A stretch of 63,996 bases of DNA, the filler included, from Salisapilia sapeloensis CBS 127946 (Eukaryota > Protista > Oomycota): assembly GCA_023334545.1 (NCBI GenBank). It is 6 parts of 6 records of this genome, joined end to end, with 100 filler letters (N's around TTAATTAATTAA, not from the genome) between each part and the next. Parts side by side here need not be neighbours in the genome. Positions count along the whole stretch, not along the records: positions 22,562 to 52,481 come from JAADVB010000225.1; 5 more parts are not named here. One strand, given 5' to 3'. Within the stretch, counting starts at the first letter, position 1. Every line of letters starts with the position of its first letter. Shown piece after piece: positions 23,079 to 51,982 of this stretch. The notes beneath the pieces are model-generated. The model was not told the origin of the DNA. It saw nothing but the letters and a program-made list of their open reading frames with translations, and did no database searches. A program made the translations under genes and the position numbers.

Positions 23079-23972
23079 TGGATTTGCCTATTGGAGTTCA
23101 TTTTCGAGAGAAAATGTTGAGAGACGAACGTAGCGTATACGTAATATGTTGAGTTTATAGTCAATGGCTTCTATTTCTTTTAATTTGGTTGGATCGAACC
23201 AATGTGTAAGTAGTAGTAATAGTTTGTGGTACATGGCGTTATACCCGCTGGTATCGAAGTAGCAATGATTAATTTGCACCACTTGGAAGGAGATATACCT
23301 TACGACGATACAAGCAATGATAGGAAAATCATGATAAAACTCTCTTAGGGGGTAAGCATTCTTCCAGTAGGACCGTCCAGAGTTCTCGAAACCGGTGAAG
23401 GTGTGGGTAACTAGGCGGCAGATCATAATGCTGGAATGGGAGATGCAAGAGAGATATCTGGTGATACTGAAACATCTGCATGTCCAATATCCGTACTGCT
23501 TGTTCTGGCAACCAGAAGTCTTGATCCATATTGAATGAGAGTCGGCAGTGCCCAATGATCTCAACAAATAATATACTAGCAGGCATGCCGTGTCATGTGG
23601 TAATCTCGGATGTTTGTGCGAAGCTACTGCATCTGATGTCATAGATATCAACTTGAACGATCAAATGCTATTCATCACTCTATGTAGTTGAACCAACCAA
23701 TCTGCTCCTTCCATGTGACGCAATAAAGGATCGGCATCAATGAAAGCGATCACCAACTGAAATTAATAGATTGTCATTTTCTATCGACGAACATGTTTGT
23801 AAGATAGTGCCACACCTATGATACTATTCAATTATTCTTTAACATTTACTAAGGATCACATACGCTTCCCAGGATGGATGTTGGTCTGGGAGCTTCAACT
23901 TGTACGAAGTTTATAAAGATAGAAACTCGAAACTACCGGAACTAAATGTAGCAGTTGAAACGCCCAAGTGCC

Positions 23973-32093: not shown

Positions 32094-33683
32094 GTGAACT
32101 TATTCGTGTACATACGTTCTTACGTGCAGAAAATTACTTCATGGGATGAAGAGGCCCAAGGTATGGGTATTGACACTGCTACCCAATTGCCAGTCAAAGT
32201 GCCGTGGACAATCCCAGGCGACTGGATAACAGCAAATCTATGGGAACGCGACTTGGACTCTAATAACAAGAAGCAGAAGCAACAGTCTTTTATATTCGGT
32301 GAGCTTCACGCCATCGAGCAAGAAAGTAACGATCGTGTGCGTCCAGCTTGTCAAAAGTACTTTGGTACTTGTGGAGGTTGTCGATATCAGCACATGGACT
32401 ATGCACTTCAGTTGGCCTATAAGCAGCAACTCATTGAAAAGATGTTCCAACCTTTCGTGAAAGACGGAAACACAAAGACCCGGCAAGTCCATGGAGTAGC
32501 TGATGTACTTCACTACCGAAATAAGATGGAATTCACGTGTAGTACAGAAGAATGGCTCCTGAGGGATGATTTGATGGCCGATCAACGCCGGACGTCATTC
32601 GCCATTGGTCTTTTTCCGGCCAAAAGTGTGGGCGTACAACGAGCAAAACTACAGCGATCAAGAAAAAAACGAGGAAACCAATGGAGTCCACAAGTTTTAT
32701 CCATCGATCATTGTGTGGTGCAGGATGAAGTGTGTGATTCTATATTGCGTGAGCTTCGCACATTGCTCTATTCATCGTCATTAGCTGCCTACAATTTTAA
32801 AGACCACTCTGGTCATTTAAAACAAATCGTTTTAAGGAGCGGAATACAAGGTCACGACCAACAGAAAGAGGTGATGCTAGGACTAGTGACGACATCGTTC
32901 AAAGGAGAACAACAGAAAGAGCTTGAACGGATCGTTGCAGAGTTACTAAGCAACCAAACAGTCTCGAATCCGATTACTTCGGTCGTACAAAAGCTAGATG
33001 AAGAAGCGCTGCGCCATCGAAGCGAGACAGACACAGTCGAGCGGCAACGTACGCTGTATGGACGAAACTTTATCTACGACCGTATCCTACAGCACGACTT
33101 CCGCATCGCTTTCGATGCCTTCTTCCAGCCAAACACTGCACAGGCGAACGTCTTATATGGTCACATTGAATCGGCCATCCAAGAGCATTGGACAGATAAT
33201 ACAAAGCAACCAGTCATTTGGGATCTCTTCTGCGGGGTGGGTAGCATCGGTATCTGTATGGCAAAACATGCTCGTAAAGTTGTCGGCTTTGAAGTTGTGG
33301 AGAGTGCCGTTGAAAATGCGAGAGAGAATGCAAAGTTGAACGGATACGACAGCGACAAGACCGAGTTTTACTGCATGGACTTGACAAAAGCATGGTCGGA
33401 TGCAGAATTGTTCGAACGCGTTGGCAATGATCGACCAGACATTGTCATCGTAGATCCGCCGCGCATGGGTTTACATAAGAAATTGATCGCTGCTCTCGAG
33501 AAATTACGACCAAAGCATATCTGCTACGTATCGTGCAACCCGAAGACTCAAGTGATTGATTTGCACCACCTATGTGATAACGCGAAAGGTAGAGCAGGGT
33601 ACGACTTGAAGATGATCCAACCAGTCGACATGGTCCCTCATACTCCGCACATCGAAACGGTCGCCTGGCTGACTCGAAACTAG
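32094..33683 (+). CDS. TrmA/RlmD(RumA)-family RNA m5U methyltransferase with TRAM domain and 4Fe-4S motif; 5' exon(s) unresolved
   Basis: CQKYFGTCGGC, HYRNKMEF, FFQPN, DLFCGVG, VDPPR, YVSCNP, PHTPHIE. A probable intron (GTAATG..GCAG) upstream gives RVLSDL-KITSW in frame, so the true start lies further 5'. Confidence 0.9.
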   Translation: MNLFVYIRSYVQKITSWDEEAQGMGIDTATQLPVKVPWTIPGDWITANLWERDLDSNNKKQKQQSFIFGELHAIEQESNDRVRPACQKYFGTCGGCRYQHMDYALQLAYKQQLIEKMFQPFVKDGNTKTRQVHGVADVLHYRNKMEFTCSTEEWLLRDDLMADQRRTSFAIGLFPAKSVGVQRAKLQRSRKKRGNQWSPQVLSIDHCVVQDEVCDSILRELRTLLYSSSLAAYNFKDHSGHLKQIVLRSGIQGHDQQKEVMLGLVTTSFKGEQQKELERIVAELLSNQTVSNPITSVVQKLDEEALRHRSETDTVERQRTLYGRNFIYDRILQHDFRIAFDAFFQPNTAQANVLYGHIESAIQEHWTDNTKQPVIWDLFCGVGSIGICMAKHARKVVGFEVVESAVENARENAKLNGYDSDKTEFYCMDLTKAWSDAELFERVGNDRPDIVIVDPPRMGLHKKLIAALEKLRPKHICYVSCNPKTQVIDLHHLCDNAKGRAGYDLKMIQPVDMVPHTPHIETVAWLTRN

Positions 33684-34404
33684 TGGTTGGAAATCAAACG
33701 ATGCAGAATAAAGCGTAGCGTGTTTACTTTGATAGACAAAAGACTGAGTATCCAATGTTCACGTGCGCAATAGACGTTTTGACTTTACATCAAACAATCT
33801 TATTGACGTCTACCTATAGCACAATCCGTGATGTATTGACCATAATTATGTCATGGTTTATGCTCTTGAACAAATCGAAGTAGAATCATAGACAACGCTA
33901 TCCTAGTAATATATTACAAGGGGCATCAAAGCTAGAAAATTGCACCTTCAACATCAGCAGTCTGCGTCTCCCATTATCGTCTCCATCCTACATGATTATC
34001 GATATATTCAAGTTTTATTCCTTCTTGCTTCGATTCCGATAAATACTTTTGAAATTGAGTTTAGCAAAGTGTAATCTTTGCTTGTGCTCTTGCGACCGTC
34101 GTCTCCTTCAACTTACATTCATAAACTCAGAATGGAAGAGTCTGTAGCGAATCGTTACCTGACAAAGCATGCTTCGAGACGGCAAAAATGAACCTCTCGT
34201 CTTTGAATTTTGATTGCATTAAACCAAAACAAGTACAACACATAACCTACAAGGAAGATGTACGCACGCTTCGACCAAAAACACTCTAGTGCTTATTTTA
34301 GGTCTTTCTAGAAATAGATTACTGGGTAGATCGTTGACATTGAACTATGCGTTTCTGCTAAGTTGTGTGAGTCGCCATCAACCTCAAAGGCTGTTCATAC
34401 AAGT

Positions 34405-36711
34405 ATGAAAGTCGGGGTAGAACCTCAACTTGAAAGGATCAGAACAGGAGAACATGACATGAAGTATTCGGATAGTAGCCGTGTCAGTAGCGAGCATCAT
34501 ACCTCTTCTTTAACAAACACCGTCAAAACGCGCATTGAAAAAGAACTGATGAAGAGAAAGCGTGCGGAAAGAAAGGCTAAAGCACGATCTCGAAGGGCAA
34601 AGCAGGATGAATATAAAGCCGAAAATGATCAAGTGAGTGGTCTTCCAAGAGATCAAGCTTCACAACCCATTAAAGAGTTACCTCCACTTCGCGACATTCC
34701 CATTTTGAAGGTAGCAACACCAGAGACGACGATTACTACGAAGGGCTCTGTAACTCTTGAAGAAGATAATGCTGATCAATCACCAGTTACATACACACCT
34801 CGGACAGCCCACGGGGCAGCGAAAAAGATTCAGAAAGTAATGAAGAAGAAGTTTAAAAAGAAGTTAAATTCGATGATAGGTAGATCTCCGCGTATATTTA
34901 TGGAACACAATCCTGGCATCCATCAAACAGAGGATTCTGCAATTTATGTGGGTGATACAAGTCACCTACATCCTGCAACTAGTATGGGACGTACGGTATC
35001 AAGTGAAAGTGAATACTCAAGTCGATCCTGCTGTTCATGCCGGTCCGATTACTCATGCTCGTGTTGCGATTCCGATGGGTCATCCACAACGTCGTGTGAC
35101 TTTACCCAGGTGTATGCTGATAAAGATGGGAGAGACAAGTCATCTCATGCATCAAATGAAGTCGGGCCGAGTGCTCGGCTGCTTGAGAGTCATCATTCGG
35201 GCTTTGCAGTCCCATCGAAGATGACCCAGGAAGACTTCGTAGCCACTCGAATTCAGGCCTGCTGGCGAGGCAGCCGAGGTCGGCGCTTGGCTGTACTGCG
35301 TTTACTTGAATTTGAGATGGAAATGAGGTCCGCGGCACTAGATGAAATAAGGTATGAAGCGTGTGTTCGAATCCAAGCACTTGCTCGAGGTTTTCTTACG
35401 AGAACACGTCTTCAGCGGAAGAGGTGCACGCAGCCATATACGGTGGACACCCACAAACCATCAGCCATGGAGGATAAAGTGCTTCTTCACAATATATCCA
35501 GCACCGTAGAAGCTATGCAGCTCGACAAAGGAATATGTGAGAAAGAAAATGAGATGTCCTCTTTGGATAGAAACGAAGAGGAAGGTCCTCTTATATGGCC
35601 TGATGAACTAAATCTAGAGGCGGAGGATACGTCCGGAAATGAGCACCATTCCGTCACTTACAGTTCCATCGAAGACCTACCCAAGTTGGTCTATGAAAAT
35701 AAACTAAAAGTATTCTGCGGAACGTGGAATCTTGGTGGTCAATTGTCAACGGAAAACCTTCGTTCCTGGATCGAACCGAACAAGTACCATATCGTTACAA
35801 TTGGTACGGAGGAATGTGGACGTTCAATTGCCCAAAGTGTGCTCTTTTCATCAAAAGAAGCGTGGGAAGACCAGTTAAAAATTACGCTCGGAATCGAGTA
35901 CACGCCAGTTGCATCACACACGTTGACAGCTATTCATAACATAGTGTTTGCACACCAGAGCGTCTTACCACTCATTCATGACGTATGCTCGAGCGCTGTT
36001 CCGACTGGACTTGGTAATAAACTAGGGAACAAAGGTGGTATTGGTATCTCGTTCACCGTCGGACGAACTTCATTTGCATTCATTAATTGCCATTTCGAAG
36101 CCCATCAAAGCAAAGTCACGAGACGAAACGCCAACTTTGATCGCATCAATAACGAGCTCAAGCTTCGAAGACAGCAGCTTCGAACGACTGAATGTGCTTC
36201 CGAAGATGCTCAGATGAGAGCCTGGACAGGCCATCGGCCAGTATCTAAATCCTTCGATCGTGTCTTTTGGTTTGGAGACTTGAACTATCGAATCAATGGC
36301 ACGAGAGAAATGGTTGACAGACTACTCAAGGAAAACCGACACGACGTTCTCTACGCGAACGACCAACTTCGTATTGAAAGAGAGCGAGGGCATGTATTTA
36401 ATCATTTCATGGAAGGACCAGTCAACTTCCGTCCAACCTATAGGTACGACATTCAAAGCGACAACTACGATACATCTTCCAAGCAAAGGATACCAGCATG
36501 GACTGATCGAATATTATACTTATCCAACGACAAGAAGGATGATATTCACATCACTAGCTACCAGAGTAAGCAAGATTACCGTATATCTGACCATCGACCA
36601 GTCAGTGCCACTTTTATCGTCAAGTTTCAAGTAAAGGAGATGAAACAAACGACGACAAGTATAAAGTATGCATCAGAAAACACAAAGAGCGAAGCATGTA
36701 ATATTCAATAA
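34405..36711 (+). CDS. Inositol polyphosphate 5-phosphatase (INPP5E-like) with two IQ motifs and C-terminal CaaX; start uncertain
   Basis: IQACWRGSRGR, IQALARGFLTR; GTWNLGG, CHFEAHQ, WFGDLNYR, PAWTDRILY, SDHRPV; ends CNIQ. Confidence 0.9.
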   Translation: MKVGVEPQLERIRTGEHDMKYSDSSRVSSEHHTSSLTNTVKTRIEKELMKRKRAERKAKARSRRAKQDEYKAENDQVSGLPRDQASQPIKELPPLRDIPILKVATPETTITTKGSVTLEEDNADQSPVTYTPRTAHGAAKKIQKVMKKKFKKKLNSMIGRSPRIFMEHNPGIHQTEDSAIYVGDTSHLHPATSMGRTVSSESEYSSRSCCSCRSDYSCSCCDSDGSSTTSCDFTQVYADKDGRDKSSHASNEVGPSARLLESHHSGFAVPSKMTQEDFVATRIQACWRGSRGRRLAVLRLLEFEMEMRSAALDEIRYEACVRIQALARGFLTRTRLQRKRCTQPYTVDTHKPSAMEDKVLLHNISSTVEAMQLDKGICEKENEMSSLDRNEEEGPLIWPDELNLEAEDTSGNEHHSVTYSSIEDLPKLVYENKLKVFCGTWNLGGQLSTENLRSWIEPNKYHIVTIGTEECGRSIAQSVLFSSKEAWEDQLKITLGIEYTPVASHTLTAIHNIVFAHQSVLPLIHDVCSSAVPTGLGNKLGNKGGIGISFTVGRTSFAFINCHFEAHQSKVTRRNANFDRINNELKLRRQQLRTTECASEDAQMRAWTGHRPVSKSFDRVFWFGDLNYRINGTREMVDRLLKENRHDVLYANDQLRIERERGHVFNHFMEGPVNFRPTYRYDIQSDNYDTSSKQRIPAWTDRILYLSNDKKDDIHITSYQSKQDYRISDHRPVSATFIVKFQVKEMKQTTTSIKYASENTKSEACNIQ

Positions 36712-36861: not shown

Positions 36862-38198
36862 ATGATCCGCCCCGCACGTACTCTTCTCCAGCGCTCTGCA
36901 CGTGCGCCCACGGGCCGTAGCTTTTCCACAAACGTACTCATTTATTCGCATTAGCCTATTTTATACCTGTGCTGAAGGTATCATGTGTCTTGCGTCCTGT
37001 AGCTCAAGAAAACAGCCTTGTATGACTTTCATGTCGAGCGCGGGGGCAAGGTAAACATCTATCATTTAAATGTCTTATGTACGGACTGTATTGTTTATCT
37101 ACTGTGGTGATGTAGATGGTGGAGTTTGCCGGTTACTCGATGCCTGTGCAGTACAAGGACGGCGTGCTCAAGTCGCACAACCATACGCGAGCTCCTGGCA
37201 AAGCGAGCCTGTTTGACGTGAGCCACATGGGCCAGCTCAAGATCACTGGTAAAGACCGCATCAAATTTCTCGAATCCGTTGTCGTGGGAGACCTCGAGGC
37301 GCTTTCCATCGGTGAAGGCAAGCTCAGTCTCATTACGAACGCCAAGGGAGGCATCATTGACGACTGCGTCATCACCAACTATGACGACCACTTGTACGTT
37401 GTGGTGAACGCTGGCAACCAGGACATTGACTGGCAGCACATGCAGTCTCTCTTGTCCGACTTTCGCGGTGACGCGAAGATGGAGAAACTCGATGATCGGT
37501 CGCTCGTGGCGCTACAAGGTCCTGGCGCAGCGGAGGTGATGCAGTCCATTGCTTCCAAGGTGGACCTGAAGACGCTAGGCTTCATGGAAGGCACCTTTAC
37601 TTCTCTCCCTGTCAATGGGAAAGATGTCGATGTCATTCTCACCCGATGCGGATACACGGGAGAAGATGGATTTGAAGTGTCCGTCGCTAGTGACAACATC
37701 GACGCCTTTGCGAGGCAGTTGGTGGAAGACGAGCGCGTGTTGGAGGCTGGACTTGGCGCTCGCGACAGCCTGCGTCTCGAAGCTGGTCTGTGTCTCCACG
37801 GTCATGACATGACGCCTGATACGACGCCAGTGGAGGCTACGTTGGCCTGGACGGTCGGGAAGCGTCGTCGTGAAGAAGGAGGTTTCCCAGGCCACGACGT
37901 GATCATGGACCAGCTGACGAACAAGACTCACACGCGTCGTCGTGTGGGCTTTACGGTGGAAGGTGCAGCTGCGAGGGAAGGCGCGGAACTGTTGGACGAG
38001 AACGATCAAGTCGTCGGGACCGTGACGAGTGGTACGTTCAGTCCGACGCTTAAGAAAGCGATCGGGATGGCGTACGTGACGAAGAAGAAGGGCAAGGTCG
38101 GTACGGAGCTACACGTGCGTGCTCGGAACAAGACGCAACGTGTGGAAATCACCAAGATGCCGTTCGTTTCGCCCAACTACTACAAGAAAGAGGCGTAG
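36862..38198 (+). CDS. GCVT: Glycine cleavage system T protein (aminomethyltransferase), mitochondrial, 3 exons
   Basis: Presequence MIRPARTLLQR..; introns 36934-37002 and 37051-37115 give LKKTALYDFH..GGK-MVEFAGYSMPVQY; LFDVSHMGQ, RCGYTGEDGFE, GLGARDSLRLEAG. Confidence 0.96.
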
Positions 38199-38306: not shown

Positions 38307-39302
38307 TTACAACAGAATGTACTTGAGACTCAATCGTTTGCTCTCTCCACGCTTTGCAGATACAACGTCATGTGGACCTGGACCGAGTTCACAAAGAGGT
38401 GAGATAAGTGCTTTCGACAATATTTCATTCGCACTTTGAGCACTTTGTAACAATTGTGCAAAAGCCGAGAAGAAATCGACATGTAAATCCAATCGCGTTA
38501 ATCGTCCAGTCGGACCAAAGTGAAGACTGAAGCGGAAGGATGGATGGATTTCCTGTCCGACGATACGTAGACTTAATTCATCATCATTGACAATGTGCGG
38601 ATACAAGAGCATGACCGTGTCTCGAGAGATTCGGAGAAGAAAGACTCCGGTCAAGTCGAACGAACTCGTCATATCTTGTTCTCGCTCACTCAAATCGACC
38701 ACATTCTCTACTTGTACAGACGCAATGTCGATATGACAAATCGCATGATACGACGTATATCTTTTCATTTGTGTACAAAGTGCCTCGACACCGTTCGTCG
38801 AAGCGCTTTGGCAAGCAAAGTCTGTCGTAGTGGCAAAGTGGAGAAAGCGCTCTTGAAGATCGCGTAGCCACGTCGAGTGGAGGGCAAATCCGTCCTGAAA
38901 TAAACGAAGGAATTGACGCGTGATGAGCCACGGGCGAGCATTCGCTTCGTCCAATGTCCTTGCACGCGACTGATCAAACGTAGATAGGAATGTTCGGTAG
39001 ACAAACAGCTCCGTCAGCTCTTCTCCCAATGTCTGTGTTTCATCTGATAGAGACTCAATGATGCCTTGCTGTCGAGCGCGGTAGCGACGTTGATTGAGTT
39101 TGCACTGCATTTTGCGTCTCGCTTTTCGTTCGTCCTCATTCTGGACAATCGGTCGTCGACCTCGCTTGCGAGGTGCTTTGCCATTCGATTTAGTTGACCC
39201 GTCTGCGACCTGTCGAGTGTCCTCGAGGGGAGGTCCGTCTGACGGTTGCGATGTGGACGTGGGCGTTGTGATCAAAGCGCTCGGACTTGCCCTTGTATCC
39301 AT
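38307..39302 (-). CDS. Oomycete-type bZIP transcription factor (Cys at the invariant-Asn position)
   Basis: RRKMQCKLNQRRYRARQQ basic region, zipper, then the typical oomycete bZIP C-terminal domain (WLITRQFLRLFQDG..). Confidence 0.85.
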   Translation of the reverse strand: MDTRASPSALITTPTSTSQPSDGPPLEDTRQVADGSTKSNGKAPRKRGRRPIVQNEDERKARRKMQCKLNQRRYRARQQGIIESLSDETQTLGEELTELFVYRTFLSTFDQSRARTLDEANARPWLITRQFLRLFQDGFALHSTWLRDLQERFLHFATTTDFACQSASTNGVEALCTQMKRYTSYHAICHIDIASVQVENVVDLSEREQDMTSSFDLTGVFLLRISRDTVMLLYPHIVNDDELSLRIVGQEIHPSFRFSLHFGPTGRLTRLDLHVDFFSAFAQLLQSAQSANEILSKALISPLCELGPGPHDVVSAKRGESKRLSLKYILL

Positions 39303-40558: not shown

Positions 40559-41806
40559 TCATCGCTCACATTTAGGTATACTCGAGGCGTCTTTGAATAA
40601 AACGATATCGTCATAATCCACGCTCTCGGATTTAATGCCTGACGTCGAATTGGAGTCCAATGCGAGACTTTCCAAAGTCAGATCTGCTGAAGTTCCAATC
40701 GATGCTTTCAACTCGCTACGGATGCACACATCTGCACTGACACGACGCGCAATAAGGACGCATCCCTTACAGAACGAAAAGTTTTTAGCCTTCAAGACAC
40801 CCCGATCGAGACGAAGTATGATACGACGGCGCACTTTACAACGACTGCAAAGAGGCTGGCGACAAACGGTGCAAGTGCCATGGTTGATCAAAGATTTGCC
40901 GGCTCCACAGCGACCAGCACAATCCGACGTCGATGGTTCGTTACGCATATATGTATCCTTATACGATGTCTGCATCATCCAGTGAAGCTTCCTCGATAAA
41001 CCGGCTTCGCCGACTAGCGAAGATGTCGCAAGAAACATGCTTACAGCTTTGGTTGATGCTATTTCCGGAATCGATCCCATCGTAGCCATAAATCCAGAAT
41101 GATAGAGCTCGACAAAGTTAGCATCCAACTGACGTCTGAGATAGCAGACCGATCCTTGGGCGCGCACACAACCATTATTCAACTCGGTCTCGCGAATATC
41201 AATAGAATGTGCGATAAAGTAACCGATTTGTTGACCATCTTTTCCCTCCGTCATGCCCATTTTGAAAAGGACTAGTACATCCCTCACATCGACGAAAGGG
41301 ATGACCGAGTTGCCCATCGTTAACCATGCGATAGCACAACTCTGATACGGCTTCTCAACGGTCGGTGTTTCGAGCGTGCATAAGTATCTGGTGTTTACCA
41401 AATTGTCTTCGACGAACATGGATCGAGCATTCCATTCAGAGGCTGTGGCTGATAGGTCTCCGTATTGGAAGTCAGATACTGTTCCAGGCACTTTGCCGAC
41501 GAGAAGAAATTTAGGAACTGATTGTTTTGGGTCAGTGACCTTATATCCACCCCGTGGTGTCTTGAGCATACGCGGGGTCTCACGAATGCGTTTCCGATCT
41601 TGGAATATTTCCAAGTGATCAACTCGTTGATGAAGCTTCCAGTATTCAGGATCCACTTGCCGATCGCGTTTATCTCGGAAATCTTTAAAATCTGCGATTG
41701 CTTTTTGTAGAATCTCGTCAGCCATTTCCTTTAATACAACCTCGGACTCTGGTCGCAATGCGAAATTCTTGGGGGCATTCGCCAATATCTTTTCCATAGA
41801 TGGCAT
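40559..41806 (-). CDS. START-like domain + degenerate FYVE-type zinc finger protein (oomycete-expanded type)
   Basis: WKLHQRVDHLEIF, LLVGKVPGTVSD..G, VRDVLVL, YFIAHSIDI, VRAQGSVCYL, then CAGRC..CTVC..CSRC..CKGC. Confidence 0.75.
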   Translation of the reverse strand: MPSMEKILANAPKNFALRPESEVVLKEMADEILQKAIADFKDFRDKRDRQVDPEYWKLHQRVDHLEIFQDRKRIRETPRMLKTPRGGYKVTDPKQSVPKFLLVGKVPGTVSDFQYGDLSATASEWNARSMFVEDNLVNTRYLCTLETPTVEKPYQSCAIAWLTMGNSVIPFVDVRDVLVLFKMGMTEGKDGQQIGYFIAHSIDIRETELNNGCVRAQGSVCYLRRQLDANFVELYHSGFMATMGSIPEIASTKAVSMFLATSSLVGEAGLSRKLHWMMQTSYKDTYMRNEPSTSDCAGRCGAGKSLINHGTCTVCRQPLCSRCKVRRRIILRLDRGVLKAKNFSFCKGCVLIARRVSADVCIRSELKASIGTSADLTLESLALDSNSTSGIKSESVDYDDIVLFKDASSIPKCER

Positions 41807-44800: not shown

Positions 44801-45546
44801 CTAGTATGCGCAGTCAGTGGTGTCACAATTCGATGAATGTAACATCGAAGCCACTGCGTTGAACATCGTTATGGGAGCCAACCTTGCCGGCTATGACTTC
44901 TGCAGCCTCGTACGCTTTTGCTTCCACGTTAGAGCCGTGCTTGCCCTTGCGCAACCATAGACGGTTCAGATATTGACATCCCGCAGATGTCACTGTTTCA
45001 TCGTTGTGCTGGATGTTTGACCGTGACTCGGCGGTCCCTCAAATAGGCACGATTGGCCAAACCAATCTTTCAAGATAACCAAATCATCTGCGCGACCAAG
45101 CTCAACGTACAGATTGCTGGCTTCGTCGACAACGGCTTTTTTTAATTTTTCTCGGAAGCTTATTCGAGTCCAGCACACCGGTTTTCGGTAAAGCCGCCCA
45201 GTACTCTATGGCGCATTCTGTGGTCCATTGGTTTGATTGGTAACCTAGAATAGTCTCAGTAGTAAACAACACTTACTTGTAGTATTTAATCTGTACCGAG
45301 ACATTTCGTCTGAAGCAAGATGTTTGTTATCTGAATCACGTTCGTATACAAGATCCCGATCTCACCTATCCACGTTTTGCAGCTCCAGTGCAAATCGGAT
45401 GGTCTTCGAATACATGTTTAGACCTTTTTTGCTTCAAACAGCAGATAGCATCAGGAAGTACCTGCGACTCGCTGATAGAATTGGCATTCTCGTTTTTTCG
45501 AGCTTTCTCTCAAGCGGACTTTCATCTTATCGAAACGGACGCTGAC

Positions 45547-48500
45547 ATGAAAGCCATCTTTCAGGCCCTCGTGGTTTCGGCGGCAGCAACGCTGATACCT
45601 TCCATCTATGCTGCCGCTCCAGATCAAGCAGACTTTCCTGCTTGTCCTTCTCACTGGATGACCAAGTACTGTTGTGACCTGGGTATCTATCAAGAGGGCG
45701 ATACCAACGAAGAGTACGGCACGATCAAGTATGTCTTCAAGGAGTATCAGCGGCCTCGTGGAAAAGGAAATAGCGGAGGTGATATCACGGAAACCTACGA
45801 AGAAGGCTGGCTAAAGGAACGCCAGATCAACTACCCGTACTCTCAGTACACGGTCGGCACTCAAAAGTTCCATTGGCGTGCTGATGACTACTGTACACTG
45901 TCCAAGGTTGGCACCGAAATGGACGGCAATGAATTCGTCTACGAATACAACTGTACGAACGACCCAGCTGAAGCCAAGGCGCTTGGATTCGTGGAAGACA
46001 AGTATGTCACGTTTGAGGAGAACCCTCGAAACAACATGGCTCGTTGTAATGGCACCTACGTCAAGATCAACACGACTGACGATGAACTCGCGTGCAGCTT
46101 CATTAGTGTACCGATCGACTACTACTTTACGACCGGAGGTGAACCACCAGCTATCGTCATCTACGTTATCTACGGAGCTCTATTTGCATGCATCGGTCTC
46201 TGGTATGCGTACAAGAAGATGTACGAAGCTGCCGTCCTACACCAGACCAAGAACAAGTCGGCGACAGCAGACAAGGGTGCCAGTTTGATGGAGGACCGTG
46301 GTGGCCCCGTCACGCCCGTTCCGGGTGAGGACACTGCCGGTCGCAAGTCACACGTCAGCATGCGATCCACGGAGATTAAGCTACGTGAGCAGACGAAGGA
46401 AATCAAGCAGGTTGGTTACAAGGACTCTATCTTTGGCAACGCGCTGCTTGCTTGGTTCGGCTTTATGGCTCTCTGCGTCCACGTCCTTCTCATCATGGTT
46501 ATCATGGACTACTACGGACACTTCCCGCGACCTTTGCTCAAGTCTGGCCAACCTCTTCTGTCGGTCTACATCTTCTTCTGGTGTACCATGCTCATCTGGA
46601 GTATGGTCATCGTGCTAACCCAGAAGACCATCCGCAACTTCTTCCGGCTTCGTGCACCGCTCGAAAAGTCGGACTTTGTCTACTTGTTCAAGCCCGAGTA
46701 CAGCGAAATTATGCTCAAGGACCGCACCAAGATTGTCGACTTTGTCCAAAAGATCGAGAAGACACTGATGCCGGATTACCAGCCAGGTCATGAAGCCACT
46801 GTCCCGGTCCAGATTACGGAGAACGGTTCTCGCTACATTGAGTTCCAGAACATCCGCTACAGCTTCTTGGAAGAGTGGGATCAATTTGTTCCGTCCACCA
46901 TCGAACTTGGTGAAACGTTTAAAGACATTCTGCTCGAGAGCGAAGGACTTAGCGAACAGGCATACAACGCCCGACTCAACCACGTCGGTCCGAATGCTAT
47001 TGACATCGAAATGCCGACGCTGCTTATGTCCATCCGGATGGAATTCTTCACGTTCTTCTACATCTACCAAATGGTCTGCTACTACGTCTGGTACTACTTT
47101 GACTACTGGAAGCTTGCTATCGTCATGACCTGTGTCATCGCCTTATCGGCTGTCATCAACATCTATACGACGCGTAAGATGCGTGCTTCGATTGTCAAAA
47201 TGTCCAAGTACGAGACCCAAGTCCGTGTCAAGCGCTCTGACCAATGGAAGACTGTCAGCTCCCGTGATCTTGTTCCTGGTGACCTTGTGTCCGTCGAAGA
47301 GAACTGGACGCTACCGTGCGACATGGTCATCGTCGCTGGTGCCACTGTCTGTGACGAAAGTATGCTCACGGGTGAAGCAAACCCGGTGCAAAAGTTCCCG
47401 ATTCCGGAGTCGGACCACGAGTACGATGCCGCGGGCGGCGGAAAGAAGTACACGCTCTTCTCTGGTACCAAGGTTCTATCTTCTGGACGTGATGAAGAGA
47501 TTTATGCTGTGGTGCAAACTACTGGTGCCCACACGTCCAAGGGTCTGCTCATCCAGAACATTCTCTTCCCAGTCCTCATGCGATTTAAGTACGACGAGCA
47601 CCTCAAGGTCATTATCGGCTTGCTCCTCATCTACGCCGTTATTGCTGTCATCCTTGCTGTCAAATTCCTCACGAGCAATGCTTCGCTTTCCAACCCTCTG
47701 AACGCTTTCTGCTACGCCATCTTCTTGCTCTCTGGTATTGTATCTCCTCTTCTCCCGTGTGTTGTCACGATCGGTCAAGTGAATGCTGCCAAGCGTCTAG
47801 AAGAGCTTAGCGTCTTCTCTCTCAACACCAACCGTATCACCCTCACGGGTAAGATCCGTGTCTTCTGCTTCGACAAGACCGGTACGCTAACCAAGGAAGG
47901 TCTTGACTTTCTTGGATTCAAACCCATCGACACGTCGAACCAAACGTTCTTGGACATGGTGCCTGGCATCGACCTGAACAACATGGGCAAGCTCTCCACG
48001 TTTGCGCTCGCTTCGTGCCACTCTGTTGGTTCCCTCAACGGTGATCTCGTCGGTAATCAGGTTGAAGTGAAGATGTTCCGTGCTACTGGATGGGAGCTCA
48101 TTGAAGAGCAAGGCAAGCAACCGATCGTCAAGAGTCCGTCTGGCACGCAGCTTCAGGTTGTCAAGCGCTTCGAGTTTGACCACCACCGTATGTCCATGTC
48201 TGTCGTAATGCGTGACGTGGAGAGTGGCAAGCTGTACGTCTTCTGCAAGGGTTCGTACGAAAAGATGCAGCAAGTCGCCACCGACGAAAGTCTTCCTGGT
48301 GACTACATGAAGGTGTCGGAAGAGCTTGCGCGTGATGGTTGCTATGTCCTCGGTATGACCGTGCGTGAGCTGCCTGCCATGGAAGAGTCGGAGCTCCAGA
48401 GCTTTATCAAGGACCGTGACGCCGTTGAAACTGGCCTCCACTCCCTTGGTCTCGTGCTCTTCCGTAACGAGCTGAAGGAAGACACTACTGATGCTATCCG

Positions 48501-49788
48501 CCAACTGCAGGAAGGACAAATCCGTCCGGCCATGATCACTGGTGACAATGCCATGTGCGGTTGCTACATTGCTAAGCAGTGTGGCATGGTCAAGGGTAAC
48601 TCTCAGGTCATCCTCGCTGACATGCAGGGTGAACGTGGCACTGGTAAGCAGCTTGTCTGGAGTGACGTCAAGACCCGCGAGACTTACTCCACCGAACAGG
48701 TGCGTGGTATGGCTGGTGGCGATGATATTGAACTTGCAGTTACTGGACCTGCCTTTGACCACCTTTGCAAGATCGACTTGATGAACGAGCTGCTTCTCCA
48801 CACGCGTATCTACTCACGTATGACTCCGGACGGGAAGGTCCAGTGCGTCCAGATGCACATGGACAAGGGTCTCGTGACTGGTATGTGCGGTGACGGTGGT
48901 AATGACTGCGGTGCCCTACGTATTGCTCACGCCGGTATCGCTCTGTCTGACGCTGAAGCATCGATCGTGTCTCCGTTCACGTCCAAGACGAAGACGGTCA
49001 TGTCGGTTGTGGACTTGTGCCGTGAAGGCCGTTGCTCGCTTGCAACGAGCTTCGGTAGTGTCAAGTTCCTCATCATGTACGGCCTCATCTGTTCGACGCT
49101 GCGTCTGGTGCAGTACTACTACGCTATTATGATCAGTGAGTGGTGCTTCGTCGTGTCTGACGCCTTCTGTCTCGTCGGTTTCTCCTACTTCATTACATTG
49201 TCCAAGCCGAAGCCGTACTTGGGTAGCGAACGACCGACGTCGAGTTTGGTTGGCCCAACGACAATTGCATCCATCCTCGGACAAGAAGCCATCAACGTCA
49301 TCTTCCTACTGACTGGTCTCCACTACCTCAGTCAAGCGGACTGGTACTGCCCGTTCGACCCCGCTGGTGCGGATCTTTCCAAGTGGTGGTTGCTTGCAGA
49401 CAACTCCATTACGACGTGCCTCTTCTTTTCAGGTGTCGTCCAGCAACAAGCCTCAGCCTTCGTATATTCGTTCGGCTCGAGCTTCCGTCAGCCCATTTGG
49501 CGCAACTGGCAGTTCTGCCTGTTCTTCGCGGCGTTGGTCGCGTTCACCTTGTACTTGCTCTTGGGTGAGCCCTCCGTCGTTATGGACCAGTTGCGCATTG
49601 CAAGCAGTACGAACGTGGTTGGTCTACCGGACATTCCGATGCCGATCAGCTTCCGCACAGAGTACATGGGCTTCTTGTTGGGCAACATGGTCGCCACGAT
49701 GCTCTTTGAATATATATTCATCCTGGGCCCAGTGCGTAACTTCCTCCGATCCAAGTTCCACAAGGACCTCTTCGACTTGAAGATGTAA
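45547..49788 (+). CDS. P5-type ATPase with N-terminal signal peptide and Cys-containing ectodomain
   Basis: Likely ATG 45547 (MKAIFQALVVSAAATLIPSIYA). Motifs DLVPGD, DESMLTGEA, VSPLLP, CFDKTGTLT, FEFDHHRMSMSV, KGSYE, MITGDN, MCGDGGNDCGAL, SPFTS, EGRCSL. Confidence 0.93.
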   Translation: MKAIFQALVVSAAATLIPSIYAAAPDQADFPACPSHWMTKYCCDLGIYQEGDTNEEYGTIKYVFKEYQRPRGKGNSGGDITETYEEGWLKERQINYPYSQYTVGTQKFHWRADDYCTLSKVGTEMDGNEFVYEYNCTNDPAEAKALGFVEDKYVTFEENPRNNMARCNGTYVKINTTDDELACSFISVPIDYYFTTGGEPPAIVIYVIYGALFACIGLWYAYKKMYEAAVLHQTKNKSATADKGASLMEDRGGPVTPVPGEDTAGRKSHVSMRSTEIKLREQTKEIKQVGYKDSIFGNALLAWFGFMALCVHVLLIMVIMDYYGHFPRPLLKSGQPLLSVYIFFWCTMLIWSMVIVLTQKTIRNFFRLRAPLEKSDFVYLFKPEYSEIMLKDRTKIVDFVQKIEKTLMPDYQPGHEATVPVQITENGSRYIEFQNIRYSFLEEWDQFVPSTIELGETFKDILLESEGLSEQAYNARLNHVGPNAIDIEMPTLLMSIRMEFFTFFYIYQMVCYYVWYYFDYWKLAIVMTCVIALSAVINIYTTRKMRASIVKMSKYETQVRVKRSDQWKTVSSRDLVPGDLVSVEENWTLPCDMVIVAGATVCDESMLTGEANPVQKFPIPESDHEYDAAGGGKKYTLFSGTKVLSSGRDEEIYAVVQTTGAHTSKGLLIQNILFPVLMRFKYDEHLKVIIGLLLIYAVIAVILAVKFLTSNASLSNPLNAFCYAIFLLSGIVSPLLPCVVTIGQVNAAKRLEELSVFSLNTNRITLTGKIRVFCFDKTGTLTKEGLDFLGFKPIDTSNQTFLDMVPGIDLNNMGKLSTFALASCHSVGSLNGDLVGNQVEVKMFRATGWELIEEQGKQPIVKSPSGTQLQVVKRFEFDHHRMSMSVVMRDVESGKLYVFCKGSYEKMQQVATDESLPGDYMKVSEELARDGCYVLGMTVRELPAMEESELQSFIKDRDAVETGLHSLGLVLFRNELKEDTTDAIRQLQEGQIRPAMITGDNAMCGCYIAKQCGMVKGNSQVILADMQGERGTGKQLVWSDVKTRETYSTEQVRGMAGGDDIELAVTGPAFDHLCKIDLMNELLLHTRIYSRMTPDGKVQCVQMHMDKGLVTGMCGDGGNDCGALRIAHAGIALSDAEASIVSPFTSKTKTVMSVVDLCREGRCSLATSFGSVKFLIMYGLICSTLRLVQYYYAIMISEWCFVVSDAFCLVGFSYFITLSKPKPYLGSERPTSSLVGPTTIASILGQEAINVIFLLTGLHYLSQADWYCPFDPAGADLSKWWLLADNSITTCLFFSGVVQQQASAFVYSFGSSFRQPIWRNWQFCLFFAALVAFTLYLLLGEPSVVMDQLRIASSTNVVGLPDIPMPISFRTEYMGFLLGNMVATMLFEYIFILGPVRNFLRSKFHKDLFDLKM

Positions 49789-50109: not shown

Positions 50110-51982
50110 TTATTCAAAAGCGATACCGCTATGAGATGAAACGTGTTTCATCATTTTATGAAAGTAGTACTGGATCTGGGCAGCAGTCGGGTAATCTTCT
50201 GGGTTAGACGAAAGACACTTGTCTGCCAACGATCGAATCGACTTTGGACATGGTTCTATCATCGACAGACGAAGGCTACCTTATGCTATTTTATTCACGA
50301 GGGAGCAGCACACTCCCAAATGGCTGGTTTCTCCAGCAATGTCGTAGTACAAAAGTTCACGCGTCGACAGCTCCGTGAGTATGAGTAGATATCACAGGCC
50401 TGCACGTAGTGTCACTCTCCTATCAGACTCTCGGGAACCAGCCATCGCACTGTTTCCACGCCTTCGACCATCATCGTCTGTAGATCGTGCTCTCGAGCAG
50501 TCCCAAAGTCACTCAGCTCAGCCAACATCGAAGGATTTACTAAAATCTCGACAGGTTTTAGGACTTGATGCAGCAGCGGAGGGACGAACGAATGAAGGTA
50601 GACCAGTGCCTTGATGATGTCATCTACGATGTAAAACTTTTGGTCACTCTATCCGTGGCGAGATGAATTCCCCTGAAGGTGACTTCGCAAGTCTCCATTC
50701 TCCATTCTCCAAGTACTCGAGCAATGCCTGGAAGTTGGAACGTTTGGTCCATGCAGCTCCAACAACTCTCAAGACATTCGGATGCTCGAGCAACGCCACG
50801 AGCTTTATTTTTTCAATAAAGTTCTGGATCACTTCCGCGTTTACCCTTTCTTCACTCACCCGCTTAGAAGCATAGAACTTGTCGTAATACTCGACCAAGT
50901 GCACGACACCGAACGCCCCTCCGCCAAATTTCCTGACATCGCGAATGTCATCAACTTTCATCTGGATATCGATCAGCTGCTGGTTGTTCCCTATCGACTT
51001 GTTTCTATCCTCCCTGCCTCCTATTCCCGCTGGAACATTCGAGCTGTCCTCTGCATAGTTCAGAGAACGCATGTTCAGCGATTAGTCTCGCTTTCGCCGC
51101 TTTAGGTAGAATAAGAATAAGCCAGCAGCGATGATAACAACAACGACGATAGAGAAGTCGATGTACATGACAGTGGATGAAGACGTTTCCTTTTCAATGG
51201 TACCTAGACTCATTTCGTAAGAACATAATGATGTGTCGCTCTTATCAACTTGACTTAAAGTCATTTTGTTCATCACACAAACCTACAGAGTGCTTGCATT
51301 CACGTAGCGAACGTCTCTATGTGGATAATCCAATGTGTCGTTTTCAAAGGCTACACCTTCCGCGTCGAGTAGTGCCTTGTTTATCGTCTTATAGAGACTT
51401 GGAGACACTGCTCGATCGGTGAAAGTATTATTGCTTAGATATCTATTCCACAATCATGCCATGACGATATCTTAATCTTGCAACGAGTAAGCTGATATAA
51501 AATTCTTAGATTGGATAAATAGGCCATGGCTTCTGGAATCATCTTCAATGAGATATAGCTCAGATCCCTATAAAACACTATAAAAGTTCTGTCAATTAAG
51601 CTAGCGTGTAGGACGACGCACAGGAATGTGAGATTCGTGCATTCTCCTGCGAAAGATTTTAATGTTGTTCTGACATCTTCTAGCTCGGTCAAGCACGTTT
51701 CTGTCTACTTTCGGAGAGTCCTTCAAATTTAAAAACTGAGAGTCTAGTTGGAGAGTTCTGAAGTTTTAGTGAATTCACCGACGTGCAGGAGTCGTAGATG
51801 TTATATTTGCCTTCGGATGGATAGGGTACGGAACTTATTAGGATGAACATCAAATGAATAGAATCATCATGGTTTATTTTACAATTCAAGCGGAATCTAT
51901 ATGGTTCTGTGCGCAACGTACTCGGTCTTTGGCAAACTAATTGGCTATACACAGTCGAACATTGTCGAGATACATCGGGCAT
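50110..51982 (-). pseudogene. Decayed LRR-TM-TKL receptor-like kinase (5' limit approximate)
   Basis: LRR-like DLSYISLKMIPEAMAYLSNLRIL; TM FSIVVVVIIAAGLFLFYL-KRRKR followed by in-frame TAA; kinase GGGAFGVV, HPNVLRVVG, LLEYLENGDL, LVYLHS, HQVLKP, LSDFG, RWLVPE, DIYS, CLSSNPEDYPTA, broken by several stops and frameshifts. Confidence 0.85.

What the first reader, a model, noticed from the sequence alone, without database searches (positions are those of the whole stretch)
45547..46620. P5 ATPase with a receptor-like signal peptide, ectodomain and extra TM
Seen: a cleavable-looking signal peptide, about 175 aa luminal domain with seven Cys and NCT/NGT/NTT sequons, a TM (46150-46212), a charged cytosolic linker, then two further TMs before the standard P5 N-terminal domain. 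Known: P5A (dislocase) and P5B (polyamine exporter) pumps from yeast and animals have no signal peptide or ectodomain. Inference: a ligand-sensing or substrate-capturing module fused to a pump, conceptually parallel to the P4-cyclase chimera on the same contig.
Basis: partly seen in the sequence, partly recalled or inferred. Interest (0 to 1): 0.72.

Follow-up and report, generated by a model that had tools for sequence, protein, structure and literature searches.

The report
P5 pump with outward-facing N-terminal domain
An oomycete P5-type transport ATPase really does begin with a signal peptide, a cysteine-rich glycosylated outer domain and one extra membrane helix, and this layout is shared by a whole family of pumps rather than being a one-off fusion.

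Summary
One uninterrupted ORF (first ATG 45547, stop 49788) encodes a 1413-aa P5 ATPase. It starts with a hydrophobic leader (aa 1-22), a 179-aa domain with seven Cys and three N-x-S/T sequons, a membrane helix (TM0, aa 202-222), a basic, partly disordered linker, and then two long helices.

Only aa 1 to about 280 has no counterpart in solved P5A or P5B structures.

The module is not unique. At least 56 non-identical oomycete homologues carry it, with all seven Cys conserved. TM0 and its juxtamembrane motif also occur in the nearest relatives:
- non-seed plants, with a short Cys-containing tail;
- early-diverging fungi, with a different Cys-rich domain.

All members examined have an M4 motif (S/N/T)PL(L/I)P instead of PPALP or PPELP. 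Three of the four spermine-binding Asp of ATP13A2 are replaced. The taxon range matches the "P5C" clade named in 2025 (TgFLP12). No paper I found describes the outward N-terminus.

The ectodomain model matched no solved fold, but the TM0 helix dominated those searches. Its function is inferred, not shown. No RNA evidence could be obtained.

The parts
45547..49788 (+). Complete intron-less gene for a 1413-aa P5-type (P5C-like) P-type ATPase, including the stop codon
   Evidence: Single ORF. First in-frame ATG is 45547. Pfam E1-E2_ATPase, Cation_ATPase and Hydrolase. Best solved relatives are ATP13A2 (1.6e-120), Ypk9 and Spf1/ATP13A1.
45547..45612 (+). Signal-peptide-like leader (aa 1-22). MK, then an 18-residue hydrophobic core, then a likely cleavage site after I-Y-A
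   Evidence: Hydropathy. A leader in the same position, ending 8-10 residues before the conserved [YF]-P-A-C motif, occurs in 44 of 56 homologues by the hydropathy cut-off; P0040 just misses it. No SignalP was available.
45613..46149 (+). Exoplasmic Cys-rich domain (aa 23-201). Seven conserved Cys and sequons at N135, N168 and N175
   Evidence: C33, C42, C43, C116, C136, C167 and C183 are invariant or at least 90% conserved in 49 sequences. AF2 gives a beta-rich domain with pLDDT 72-92. No Pfam family. No fold match. Sequon density is 16.2 per 1000 aa against 2.5 in the rest of the protein.
46150..46212 (+). Extra transmembrane helix TM0 (aa 202-222), running from outside to the cytosol
   Evidence: Hydropathy. 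AF2 helix aa 200/201 to 237/248 with pLDDT 91-97. Net charge averages +1.95 in the 12 residues after it across the family. It is homologous to the TM0 of fungal relatives by hhalign (89%, E 2e-6) and aligns with plant relatives.
46213..46422 (+). Cytosolic linker (aa 223-292). A basic start, a disordered middle holding an R-G-G-P-x-T-P motif, a short helix at 274-284, and a strand at 287-292 that opens the P5 N-terminal domain
   Evidence: AF2 pLDDT is 41-57 for aa 240-272, then rises. The motifs recur in paralogues. Structural alignment to Spf1 residue 7 and ATP13A2 residue 34 starts at aa 280-285.
46429..46617 (+). Membrane hairpin of the P5 N-terminal domain. Ma is aa 295-322 (28-residue helix), then a short loop, then Mb at aa 335-357 (23-residue helix)
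   Evidence: AF2 secondary structure. Residues D321, W345 and W351 are almost invariant across oomycetes, plants and fungi. The hairpin falls inside the region aligned to P5A and P5B structures.
46618..49785 (+). Remaining N-terminal domain, the A, P and N domains, and M1-M10 of the pump
47743..47757 (+). M4 signature S-P-L-L-P (aa 733-737)
   Evidence: All 126 family sequences that hold a DKTGT motif have (S/N/T)P(L/V)(L/I/V)P here, and 123 of them fit (S/N)PL(L/I)P. None has PPALP or PPELP.
47872..47886 (+). Phosphorylation motif D-K-T-G-T (aa 776-780)
   Evidence: Read directly from the sequence. Invariant in alignment A2.

Best explanation
The gene encodes an oomycete P5-type ATPase of the non-A, non-canonical-B lineage, most likely the 'P5C' clade of TgFLP12. 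Its N-terminus lies on the luminal or extracellular side.

Proposed route of the chain:
1. A cleavable leader sends the first ~180 residues into the ER lumen. There they fold into a disulfide-bonded, N-glycosylated, beta-rich domain.
2. The extra helix TM0 brings the chain back to the cytosol.
3. A flexible basic linker leads into the usual P5 N-terminal domain, with its two-helix membrane hairpin.
4. The ten-helix pump follows, giving 13 predicted membrane helices.

Shown here: the elements exist, are in one frame, are conserved family-wide, and have no counterpart in solved P5A or P5B structures.

Inferred:
- TM0 is the ancestral feature. The ~175-aa oomycete ectodomain is a lineage-specific addition to it.
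- The module acts in cis like the accessory subunits of other P-type pumps (Na,K-ATPase beta, Cdc50). It would support folding, ER exit and stability. It would also cover the exoplasmic mouth of a substrate path that is much less acidic than in the polyamine pump ATP13A2. That suits an amphipathic or lipid-like cargo rather than spermine.

I rate a dedicated ligand-sensing role as less likely.
For: - One ORF with the first ATG at the leader.
- P5 identity.
- An exhaustive HMMER search with aa 1-340 found only P5 pumps or their fragments from oomycetes, and no stand-alone ectodomain protein.
- At least 56 non-identical homologues have the same module, with seven conserved Cys. Across those homologues the median ectodomain is 172 aa with 3 sequons, sequon density is 16.2 against 2.5 per 1000 aa, and the net charge after TM0 averages +1.95.
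- AF2 models TM0 as a confident long helix and Ma and Mb as 28- and 23-residue helices.
- Alignments to Spf1 and ATP13A2 start at aa 280-285. The linker must therefore be cytosolic and the domain before TM0 exoplasmic.
- TM0 and the juxtamembrane (T/S)-E/D-x-P motif are shared with plant and fungal relatives, while the ectodomains differ.
- The M4 motif is SPLLP throughout.
- Of the ATP13A2 spermine ligands named in PMC8564547, D254, D463 and D960 are F, F and E/Q here. W251, F963 and D967 are kept.
- The P5C clade's published taxon range (fungi, mosses, diatoms, oomycetes, alveolates; absent from animals, yeast and flowering plants) matches the relatives found.
- AlphaFold was reported to give Plasmodium ATPase3, a P5C member, two N-terminal TM helices plus one extra membrane-crossing helix. 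That author dismissed the extra helix as hallucinated.
Against:
- No signal-peptide predictor was available. The likely cleavage site has Ile at -3, which is only moderately good.
- Eleven of the 56 homologue models lack a leader, probably because of mis-called starts. This was not checked at the DNA level.
- The ectodomain has no recognisable fold, so no biochemical role can be read from it.
I could not see where TM0 or the ectodomain docks on the pump.
- P5C membership rests on taxon range and shared motifs, not on a tree containing TgFLP12.
- The accessory-subunit analogy is an inference from general architecture only.
Confidence: 0.7

Rival explanations
1. Receptor-like or substrate-capturing module. 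The ectodomain binds a specific extracellular or luminal ligand. It either hands that ligand to the pump's exoplasmic entry or gates the ATPase allosterically through TM0 and the linker.
For: - The ectodomain scaffold is strictly conserved: seven Cys, W88, R92 and the N-P-R-N-N-N-A-S motif.
- It evolves faster than the core, at 24-35% against 37-58% identity, as binding domains often do.
- The family is expanded to several paralogues per oomycete genome.
- Unrelated ectodomains were acquired on the same TM0 in fungi and in an unidentified protist, P0133.
- P5B pumps take substrate from the exoplasmic side (PMC8564547).
Against: - No match to any known ligand-binding fold or Pfam family.
- Plant relatives work with a tail of only ~25 residues, so the pump itself does not need a large domain.
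- The linker is largely disordered in the model, a poor conduit for allostery.
- Nothing was tested experimentally.
Confidence: 0.2
2. Gene-model or reading artefact. The N-terminal 220-290 codons are a separate small type-I membrane protein gene, untranslated leader sequence, or a skipped exon. The real pump would start further downstream.
For: - No RNA data could be obtained.
- Eleven database models of homologues start just before the Cys-rich domain without a leader. This shows that start-site calling in this family is unreliable.
Against: - There is no stop codon between the module and the pump here, in L001 or in L002/L003.
- The module, linker and hairpin stay in one frame in at least 56 homologues across Albugo, Lagenidium, Pythium, Phytophthora and the downy mildews.
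- Fern transcriptome contigs encode the short tail, TM0 and the pump on one ORF.
- The linker carries conserved motifs that run straight into the strand opening the P5 N-terminal domain.
- Coding-level GC runs through the whole interval.
Confidence: 0.04
3. The hydrophobic segments are real, but the N-terminal domain is cytosolic. TM0 would be a membrane-embedded, non-spanning helix, like the N-terminal loop of ATP13A2.
For: The N-terminal hydrophobic region of ATP13A2 does not cross the membrane (the triangular loop described in PMC12655044). Hydropathy alone can therefore mislead in P5 pumps.
Against: - A leader at the very N-terminus, seven conserved Cys and sequon enrichment all argue for the secretory lumen.
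- TM0 is a 21-residue hydrophobic core within a helix of about 40-50 residues in the two models, followed by Lys/Arg.
- The ATP13A2-type loop corresponds to the later Ma/Mb region, not to TM0.
Confidence: 0.05

Closest known systems
P5C-ATPases (TgFLP12 of Toxoplasma gondii, PF3D7_0504000/ATPase3 of Plasmodium; Nat Commun 2025, PMC12217143)
   Same: A third P5 clade reported in fungi, mosses, diatoms, oomycetes and alveolates, and absent from animals, yeast and flowering plants. The relatives found here have the same range. Plasmodium ATPase3 has an N-terminal extension. AlphaFold gave it two N-terminal TM helices plus one extra membrane-crossing helix, which resembles TM0 + Ma + Mb.
   Different: TgFLP12 is described with 12 predicted TMs and no N-terminal targeting sequence. 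That paper describes no signal peptide, ectodomain or outward N-terminus. Its proposed role, C14:0 export from the apicoplast, is called a derived state. I could not place the window protein in a tree with TgFLP12.
P5B polyamine pumps (human ATP13A2, fungal Ypk9)
   Different: M4 is SPLLP, not PPALP. D254, D463 and D960 become F, F and E/Q, and Q944 becomes C. The N-terminal membrane element is modelled as two long helices rather than a short non-spanning loop. ATP13A2 has nothing equivalent to aa 1 to about 280.
P5A helix dislocases (yeast Spf1, human ATP13A1)
   Same: Two N-terminal membrane helices (Ma/Mb) inside the N-terminal domain. Structural alignments cover model residues 81-1199, starting at Spf1 residue 7.
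   Different: Weaker sequence match, about 1e-89 at 22-26% identity. No PPELP motif. Spf1 begins where the window protein is already at aa ~280.
Single-pass or two-pass accessory subunits of other P-type pumps (Na,K-ATPase beta subunit; Cdc50 of P4 flippases), and the 11th helix plus luminal tail of SERCA2b
   Same: A membrane anchor joined to a disulfide-bonded, N-glycosylated exoplasmic domain next to a P-type pump. In SERCA2b, an extra helix puts a terminus in the lumen. This comparison rests on textbook knowledge, not on a test here.
   Different: Here the module is fused in cis at the N-terminus and has type-I orientation. No fold similarity to the beta subunit or Cdc50 was detected. This is a functional analogy only.
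P4-ATPase-guanylate cyclase chimera (P4GC), present on the same contig at 23955-31562
   Same: Another P-type ATPase of stramenopiles and alveolates with an added module.
   Different: That fusion is C-terminal, cytosolic and enzymatic, with two cyclase domains. It is already described (PMC13466520). It is not related to the P5 N-terminal module.

Membership tests
P-type ATPase, type P5 | DKTGT phosphorylation site in the extended F-D-K-T-G-T-L-T context, a TGE(S) actuator motif and a GDGxND hinge | tested here: met
   DKTGT at aa 776-780, within F-C-F-D-K-T-G-T-L-T. L-T-G-E-A at 607-611 (Ser replaced by Ala; homologues have TGES). G-D-G-G-N-D at 1115-1120.
P-type ATPase, type P5 | Closest solved relatives are P5 pumps, with an N-terminal domain holding a membrane element ahead of M1 | tested here: met
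P5B (polyamine pumps) | M4 motif P-P-A/V-L-P | tested here: not met
   S-P-L-L-P at aa 733-737. None of 126 family sequences has PPALP. ATP13A2 shows P-P-A-L-P in the alignment.
P5B (polyamine pumps) | Acidic and aromatic spermine ligands D254, D463, D960, D967, W251 and F963 (PMC8564547) | tested here: not met
   W515, F1201 and D1205 are kept. D254 is F518, D463 is F726, and D960 is E1198 (Q in most members).
P5B (polyamine pumps) | N-terminal membrane loop of three short helices that does not span the bilayer | tested here: inconclusive
   AF2 gives two helices of 28 and 23 residues. This is a prediction, not a topology experiment.
P5A (helix dislocases) | M4 motif P-P-E/D-L-P | tested here: not met
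   S-P-L-L-P here.
P5A (helix dislocases) | Closer to Spf1/ATP13A1 than to P5B in sequence | tested here: not met
   297-304 bits to P5A, against 370-407 bits to P5B.
P5C (TgFLP12 clade) | Falls in the clade with TgFLP12 (TGGT1_289070) and PF3D7_0504000 in a P5 phylogeny | not testable with these tools
   No apicomplexan P5C sequence could be obtained.
P5C (TgFLP12 clade) | Taxon range: fungi, basal land plants, oomycetes and other protists; absent from animals, yeast and flowering plants | tested here: met
   Of the 120 best core hits listed, nearly all with a source name are oomycetes, liverworts, mosses, lycophytes, ferns, or Mucoromycota/Zoopagomycota fungi. No animal, ascomycete yeast or angiosperm appears. 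Mosses have only one non-P5A type in PMC3355532.
Type-I membrane topology of the N-terminal module | N-terminal hydrophobic leader, exoplasmic-type composition (conserved Cys, sequons), a single TM, and positive charge on the cytosolic side | tested here: met
   Cleavage and glycosylation themselves cannot be tested in silico.

The most novel reading that the evidence does not exclude
The whole P5C lineage would have a 13-helix topology with an exoplasmic N-terminus, which to my knowledge is unique among eukaryotic P-type ATPases. On the shared TM0 anchor, different lineages independently mounted different Cys-rich ectodomains: oomycetes, zygomycete-grade fungi and at least one unidentified protist. 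These would act as substrate-capture or ligand-gating modules, making the proteins pump-receptor hybrids whose paralogue expansion in oomycetes diversifies what is sensed or taken up.
Probability: 0.2. Interest if true: 0.8.

Novelty: new variant of a known kind. Interest (0 to 1): 0.58.

Why it matters
As far as I know, well-studied eukaryotic P-type ATPases start in the cytosol. A family that starts outside, with a cleavable leader, a glycosylated disulfide-bonded domain and an odd number of helices, would change how these pumps are modelled. One published AlphaFold analysis dismissed what may be the equivalent helix in Plasmodium ATPase3 as a hallucination.

It would also bear on how the pumps are targeted and on how their substrate reaches the entry site. 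The P5C clade has only one functionally studied member. The clade-wide SPLLP motif and the loss of three of the four spermine-binding aspartates give concrete handles for substrate work.

In oomycetes the family has several paralogues per genome, and the outward domain would be accessible from outside the cell or the lumen. That makes localisation, tagging and antibody experiments straightforward.

Tried and rejected
Searches that found nothing or little:
- A word-indexed search with aa 1-340 found nothing, because the region is too divergent. The exhaustive HMMER search was needed.
- The ESM Atlas feature search on the ectodomain gave no usable hit. On the core it returned only generic P5 clusters.
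- Pfam found nothing in aa 1-428, nor in the fungal, protist or other oomycete ectodomains.
- Foldseek against the PDB gave a best E of 0.049, to the PAC/ASOR channel at TM-score 0.14. The Atlas structure search gave TM 0.30 or lower.
- Both VIA searches aligned only the TM0 helix.

- Supplements of the P5C paper are not held, so accession-level membership could not be checked.

Other dead ends:
- The zoospore membrane proteome paper mentions P-type ATPases but none identifiable as P5.
- The bacterial-type promoter scan is irrelevant to a eukaryote.

Ideas considered and rejected:
- N-myristoylation of the plant M-G-K-Y tail. Lys at position 2 is disallowed by the PROSITE rule (recalled from memory), and the Gly is not conserved in liverworts.
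- A separate upstream gene, because there is no stop codon.
- Homology between the oomycete and fungal ectodomains. hhalign aligns only the last Cys, the juxtamembrane motif and TM0.
Full report
**The observation**

The piece contains one long uninterrupted ORF, 45388..49788 on the + strand. In that frame there is a stop near 45280 and no ATG before 45547. The natural product is therefore 1413 aa starting M-K-A-I-F.

- a hydrophobic leader at aa 2-25;
- Cys at 33, 42, 43, 116, 136, 167 and 183;
- sequons N-C-T (135), N-G-T (168) and N-T-T (175);
- a hydrophobic helix at aa 198-222, whose core 202-222 is nt 46150-46212;
- a Lys-rich, charged stretch after it;
- two further hydrophobic stretches, at 293-326 and 336-360.

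GC content is at coding level (0.51-0.54) across the whole gene and lower in most of the flanking sequence.

**What the protein is**

Pfam finds E1-E2_ATPase, Cation_ATPase and Hydrolase, but nothing in the first 428 residues. Against solved structures the best sequence matches are:
- human ATP13A2 (P5B), 1.6e-120, with query 427-1354 aligned to residues 162-1080;
- fungal Ypk9, 2.6e-109;
- the P5A pumps ATP13A1 and Spf1, about 1e-89.

The catalytic motifs are present: DKTGT at 776-780, T-G-E-A at 608-611 and GDGGND at 1115-1120.

**Is the N-terminal module real and conserved?**

An exhaustive HMMER search of 1.84 billion representatives with aa 1-340 gave 18 hits. The named ones are all oomycete P5 pumps, from Globisporangium, Lagenidium, Albugo and Pythium insidiosum. 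The short hits are fragments or broken models of such pumps, not stand-alone proteins.

A search with the core (aa 430-1400) returned 3429 proteins at E 1e-20 or better. The top ~95 are mostly named oomycete proteins of about 1400 aa. They come from Phytophthora, Pythium, Peronospora, Hyaloperonospora, Bremia, Plasmopara, Lagenidium (at least seven loci) and Albugo, and a few are unnamed metagenomic sequences.

Their N-termini show the same plan:
- a leader;
- [Y/F]-P-A-C-[P/A]-x-x-H ... Y-Y-C-C;
- G-W-x-x-x-R-Q-[V/I]-N;
- C-R, then Q-C;
- N-P-R-N-N-N-A-S-x-P-x-G-A-x-C, then a last C;
- F-T-T-F-x-E-x-P-L running into the helix.

In a 49-sequence alignment all seven Cys are invariant or at least 90% conserved.

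Figures over 56 non-identical full-length oomycete members:

| Measure | Value |
|---|---|
| Median ectodomain length | 172 aa |
| Median Cys in ectodomain | 7 |
| Median sequons in ectodomain | 3 |
| Sequon density, ectodomain vs rest | 16.2 vs 2.5 per 1000 residues |
| Cys content, ectodomain vs rest | 4.0% vs 2.0% |
| Mean net charge of the 12 residues after the helix | +1.95 |

Forty-four members pass the cut-off for a hydrophobic leader and one more (P0040) just misses it. Eleven database models start 2-10 residues before the first Cys motif. I take these as mis-called starts but did not check the DNA.

The homologous genes in L001 and in L002/L003 are also single ORFs.

**Topology**

AlphaFold2 with family alignments gave two models.

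Model of aa 1-240 (pLDDT 78, pTM 0.65):
- a beta-rich domain, with a long hairpin at 38-68, a helix at 79-88, and further strands between 114 and 174;
- then one long helix, 200-237.

Model of aa 200-1399 (pLDDT 86.4, pTM 0.83):
- TM0 as a helix, 201-248;
- a disordered stretch, 250-272;
- a short helix, 274-284;
- a strand, 287-292;
- two long helices, 295-322 and 335-357;
- then a normal P5 pump.

Two conclusions follow:
- Only aa 1 to about 280 is additional.

The strand before Ma belongs to the cytosolic N-terminal domain in all solved P5 pumps. The linker must therefore be cytosolic, and a single spanning TM0 puts aa 23-201 on the exoplasmic side. The leader, the conserved Cys, the sequon enrichment and the positive-inside charge all agree with this.

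**How old is the module?**

The nearest non-oomycete relatives (37-44% identity in the core) fall into three groups:
- Non-seed plants: Marchantia, Calypogeia, Ceratodon, Sphagnum, Selaginella, Diphasiastrum, Adiantum and Ceratopteris, plus transcriptome ORFs from Pteridium and Psilotum.
- Early-diverging fungi: Mucoromycota, Basidiobolus, Conidiobolus and Mycoemilia.
- A few unnamed protist sequences.

All of them have a helix at the TM0 position followed by basic residues, then the linker and the hairpin. What precedes TM0 differs:
- plants have only ~25 residues with two Cys;
- the fungi have a leader and a different Cys-rich domain with 12 invariant Cys;
- one protist sequence, P0133, has about 350 residues.

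Profile-profile comparison of the oomycete and fungal modules aligns only the last Cys, the F-[T/S]-E-P juxtamembrane motif, TM0 and the basic stretch (probability 89%, E 2e-6). TM0 is therefore ancestral to this lineage, and the large ectodomains are lineage-specific additions.

In a quick maximum-likelihood tree of the core (69 sequences, 983 columns, rooted on the fungi):
- the oomycete sequences form one clade (SH-aLRT 100);
- at least three paralogue groups lie inside the Peronosporales, Pythiales, Albugo and Lagenidium set;
- the window protein, with a metagenomic sequence (P0040), branches outside that set.

This suggests the organism is an oomycete from another order. I could not identify it further.

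**Which P5 subtype?**

All 126 family sequences that hold a DKTGT motif carry (S/N/T)P(L/V)(L/I/V)P in M4, mostly SPLLP or NPLLP. None has the P5B motif PPALP or the P5A motif PPELP.

The ATP13A2 residues that coordinate spermine are D254, D463, D960, D967, W251 and F963 (PMC8564547). Their equivalents here are:

| ATP13A2 residue | Window protein | Rest of the family |
|---|---|---|
| W251 | W515 | mostly W |
| D254 | F518 | F, T or N |
| D463 | F726 | F or A |
| D960 | E1198 | Q in most |
| F963 | F1201 | F, Y or W |
| D967 | D1205 | D in 64 of 69, E in the rest |

Q944 of the stabilising tetrad is Cys. The substrate path therefore keeps one acidic centre but is otherwise aromatic and hydrophobic.

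A 2025 paper defined a third clade, P5C, around Toxoplasma TgFLP12 and Plasmodium PF3D7_0504000. [quoted passage not shown] TgFLP12 is proposed to export C14:0 fatty acid from the apicoplast (PMC12217143). This range is the one found here.

Mosses have only one non-P5A type, called P5B in PMC3355532. By elimination, the plant relatives here are the moss P5C. I could not obtain an apicomplexan sequence to build the confirming tree, so membership is likely but not shown.

That paper reports 12 predicted TMs and no N-terminal targeting signal. It does not mention an outward N-terminus.

A modelling study of Plasmodium ATPase3 notes an N-terminal extension. It reports that AlphaFold produced two N-terminal TM helices plus a "hallucinated" helix crossing the membrane (PMC12655044). 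Given the conservation seen here, that helix may be real. This is a lead, not a result.

**Mechanism**

Shown:
- the architecture, its conservation, and its absence from solved P5A and P5B structures;
- the altered M4 motif and substrate-site residues.

Inferred:
- The leader is cleaved.
- The domain is glycosylated and disulfide-bonded.
- TM0 spans once, giving 13 helices in all.

My preferred functional reading is that the module behaves as a built-in accessory subunit. It resembles in outline the Na,K-ATPase beta subunit or Cdc50, which are a membrane anchor plus a glycosylated, disulfide-bonded exoplasmic domain. It would assist folding, ER exit and stability. It would also sit over the exoplasmic mouth of a pump that handles an amphipathic rather than a polycationic substrate.

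Reasons for this reading:
- TM0 is universal in the lineage while the ectodomain is dispensable in plants.
- The linker is flexible.
- No binding fold is recognisable.

Independent acquisition of different ectodomains on the same anchor, together with the paralogue expansion, argues in its favour.

**Limits**

- No signal-peptide predictor was available.
- The ectodomain was not folded on its own, and the structural searches were dominated by the TM0 helix.

**Verdict**

This is an ordinary member of a large oomycete pump family, most likely P5C. The family's N-terminal architecture is unusual for a P-type ATPase and, as far as the searched literature shows, undescribed.

Noticed in passing
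window 23955-31562 (+): A 2535-codon ORF encodes a P4-ATPase (PhoLip_ATPase_N and _C) fused to guanylate/adenylate cyclase catalytic domains, with three Guanylate_cyc stretches. The family is already described in stramenopiles and alveolates (PMC13466520).
   Followed up: partly
window 32094-33683 (+), 34363-36711 (+), 37116-38198 (+), 38307-39302 (-), 40559-41806 (-): Neighbouring ORFs with ordinary Pfam hits. They are a tRNA (uracil-5)-methyltransferase-like protein; an inositol-polyphosphate-phosphatase-type Exo_endo_phos2 domain with an IQ motif; the glycine-cleavage T protein; a weak bZIP; and a weak IBR/RING-like protein. All look like intron-poor housekeeping genes.
   Followed up: no
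window 50644-51072 (-): A 142-aa ORF that looks like the N-lobe of a protein kinase (G-G-G-A-F-G-V-V ... A-S-K-R motif). It is possibly one exon or a fragment. Protein kinase genes also flank the homologous pump in L001.
   Followed up: no
window 47365-47379 (aa 607-611): The actuator-domain motif reads T-G-E-A instead of the T-G-E-S found in nearly all homologues. The catalytic Glu is kept. The effect on dephosphorylation is unknown.
   Followed up: no
window 46288-46310 (aa ~248-255), and the linker of paralogues: A conserved linker motif, [K/D]-L-L-[D/N]-x-R-G-G-P-x-T-P, followed by M-R-[A/S]-[T/S]-E-x-x-L-R, appears in this protein and many paralogues. The T-P could be a proline-directed phosphorylation site regulating the pump. 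This is speculation.
   Followed up: no
P0133 (Logan, 1557 aa) and P0141-P0148, P0151 (fungi): Relatives outside the oomycetes carry other N-terminal exoplasmic domains on the same TM0. P0133, an unidentified protist sequence, has a ~350-aa domain. Mucoromycota and Zoopagomycota fungi have a domain with 12 invariant Cys. Neither has a Pfam match.
   Followed up: partly
Plant relatives P0124-P0140, loop between Ma and Mb: In non-seed plants, and in P0133 and P0146, the Ma-Mb loop is longer and holds a conserved C-x-V-x-G-[I/V]-D-x-L-C-F-[Y/F]-G motif with two Cys. This fits a luminal, disulfide-bonded loop and so a truly membrane-spanning hairpin in this lineage.
   Followed up: no
Pythium oligandrum P0037 and P0041: Two paralogues (locus tags Poli38472_010445 and Poli38472_010453) lie on the same 955,744-bp contig only eight locus tags apart. 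They are each other's closest relatives in the tree, pointing to a recent local duplication.
   Followed up: no
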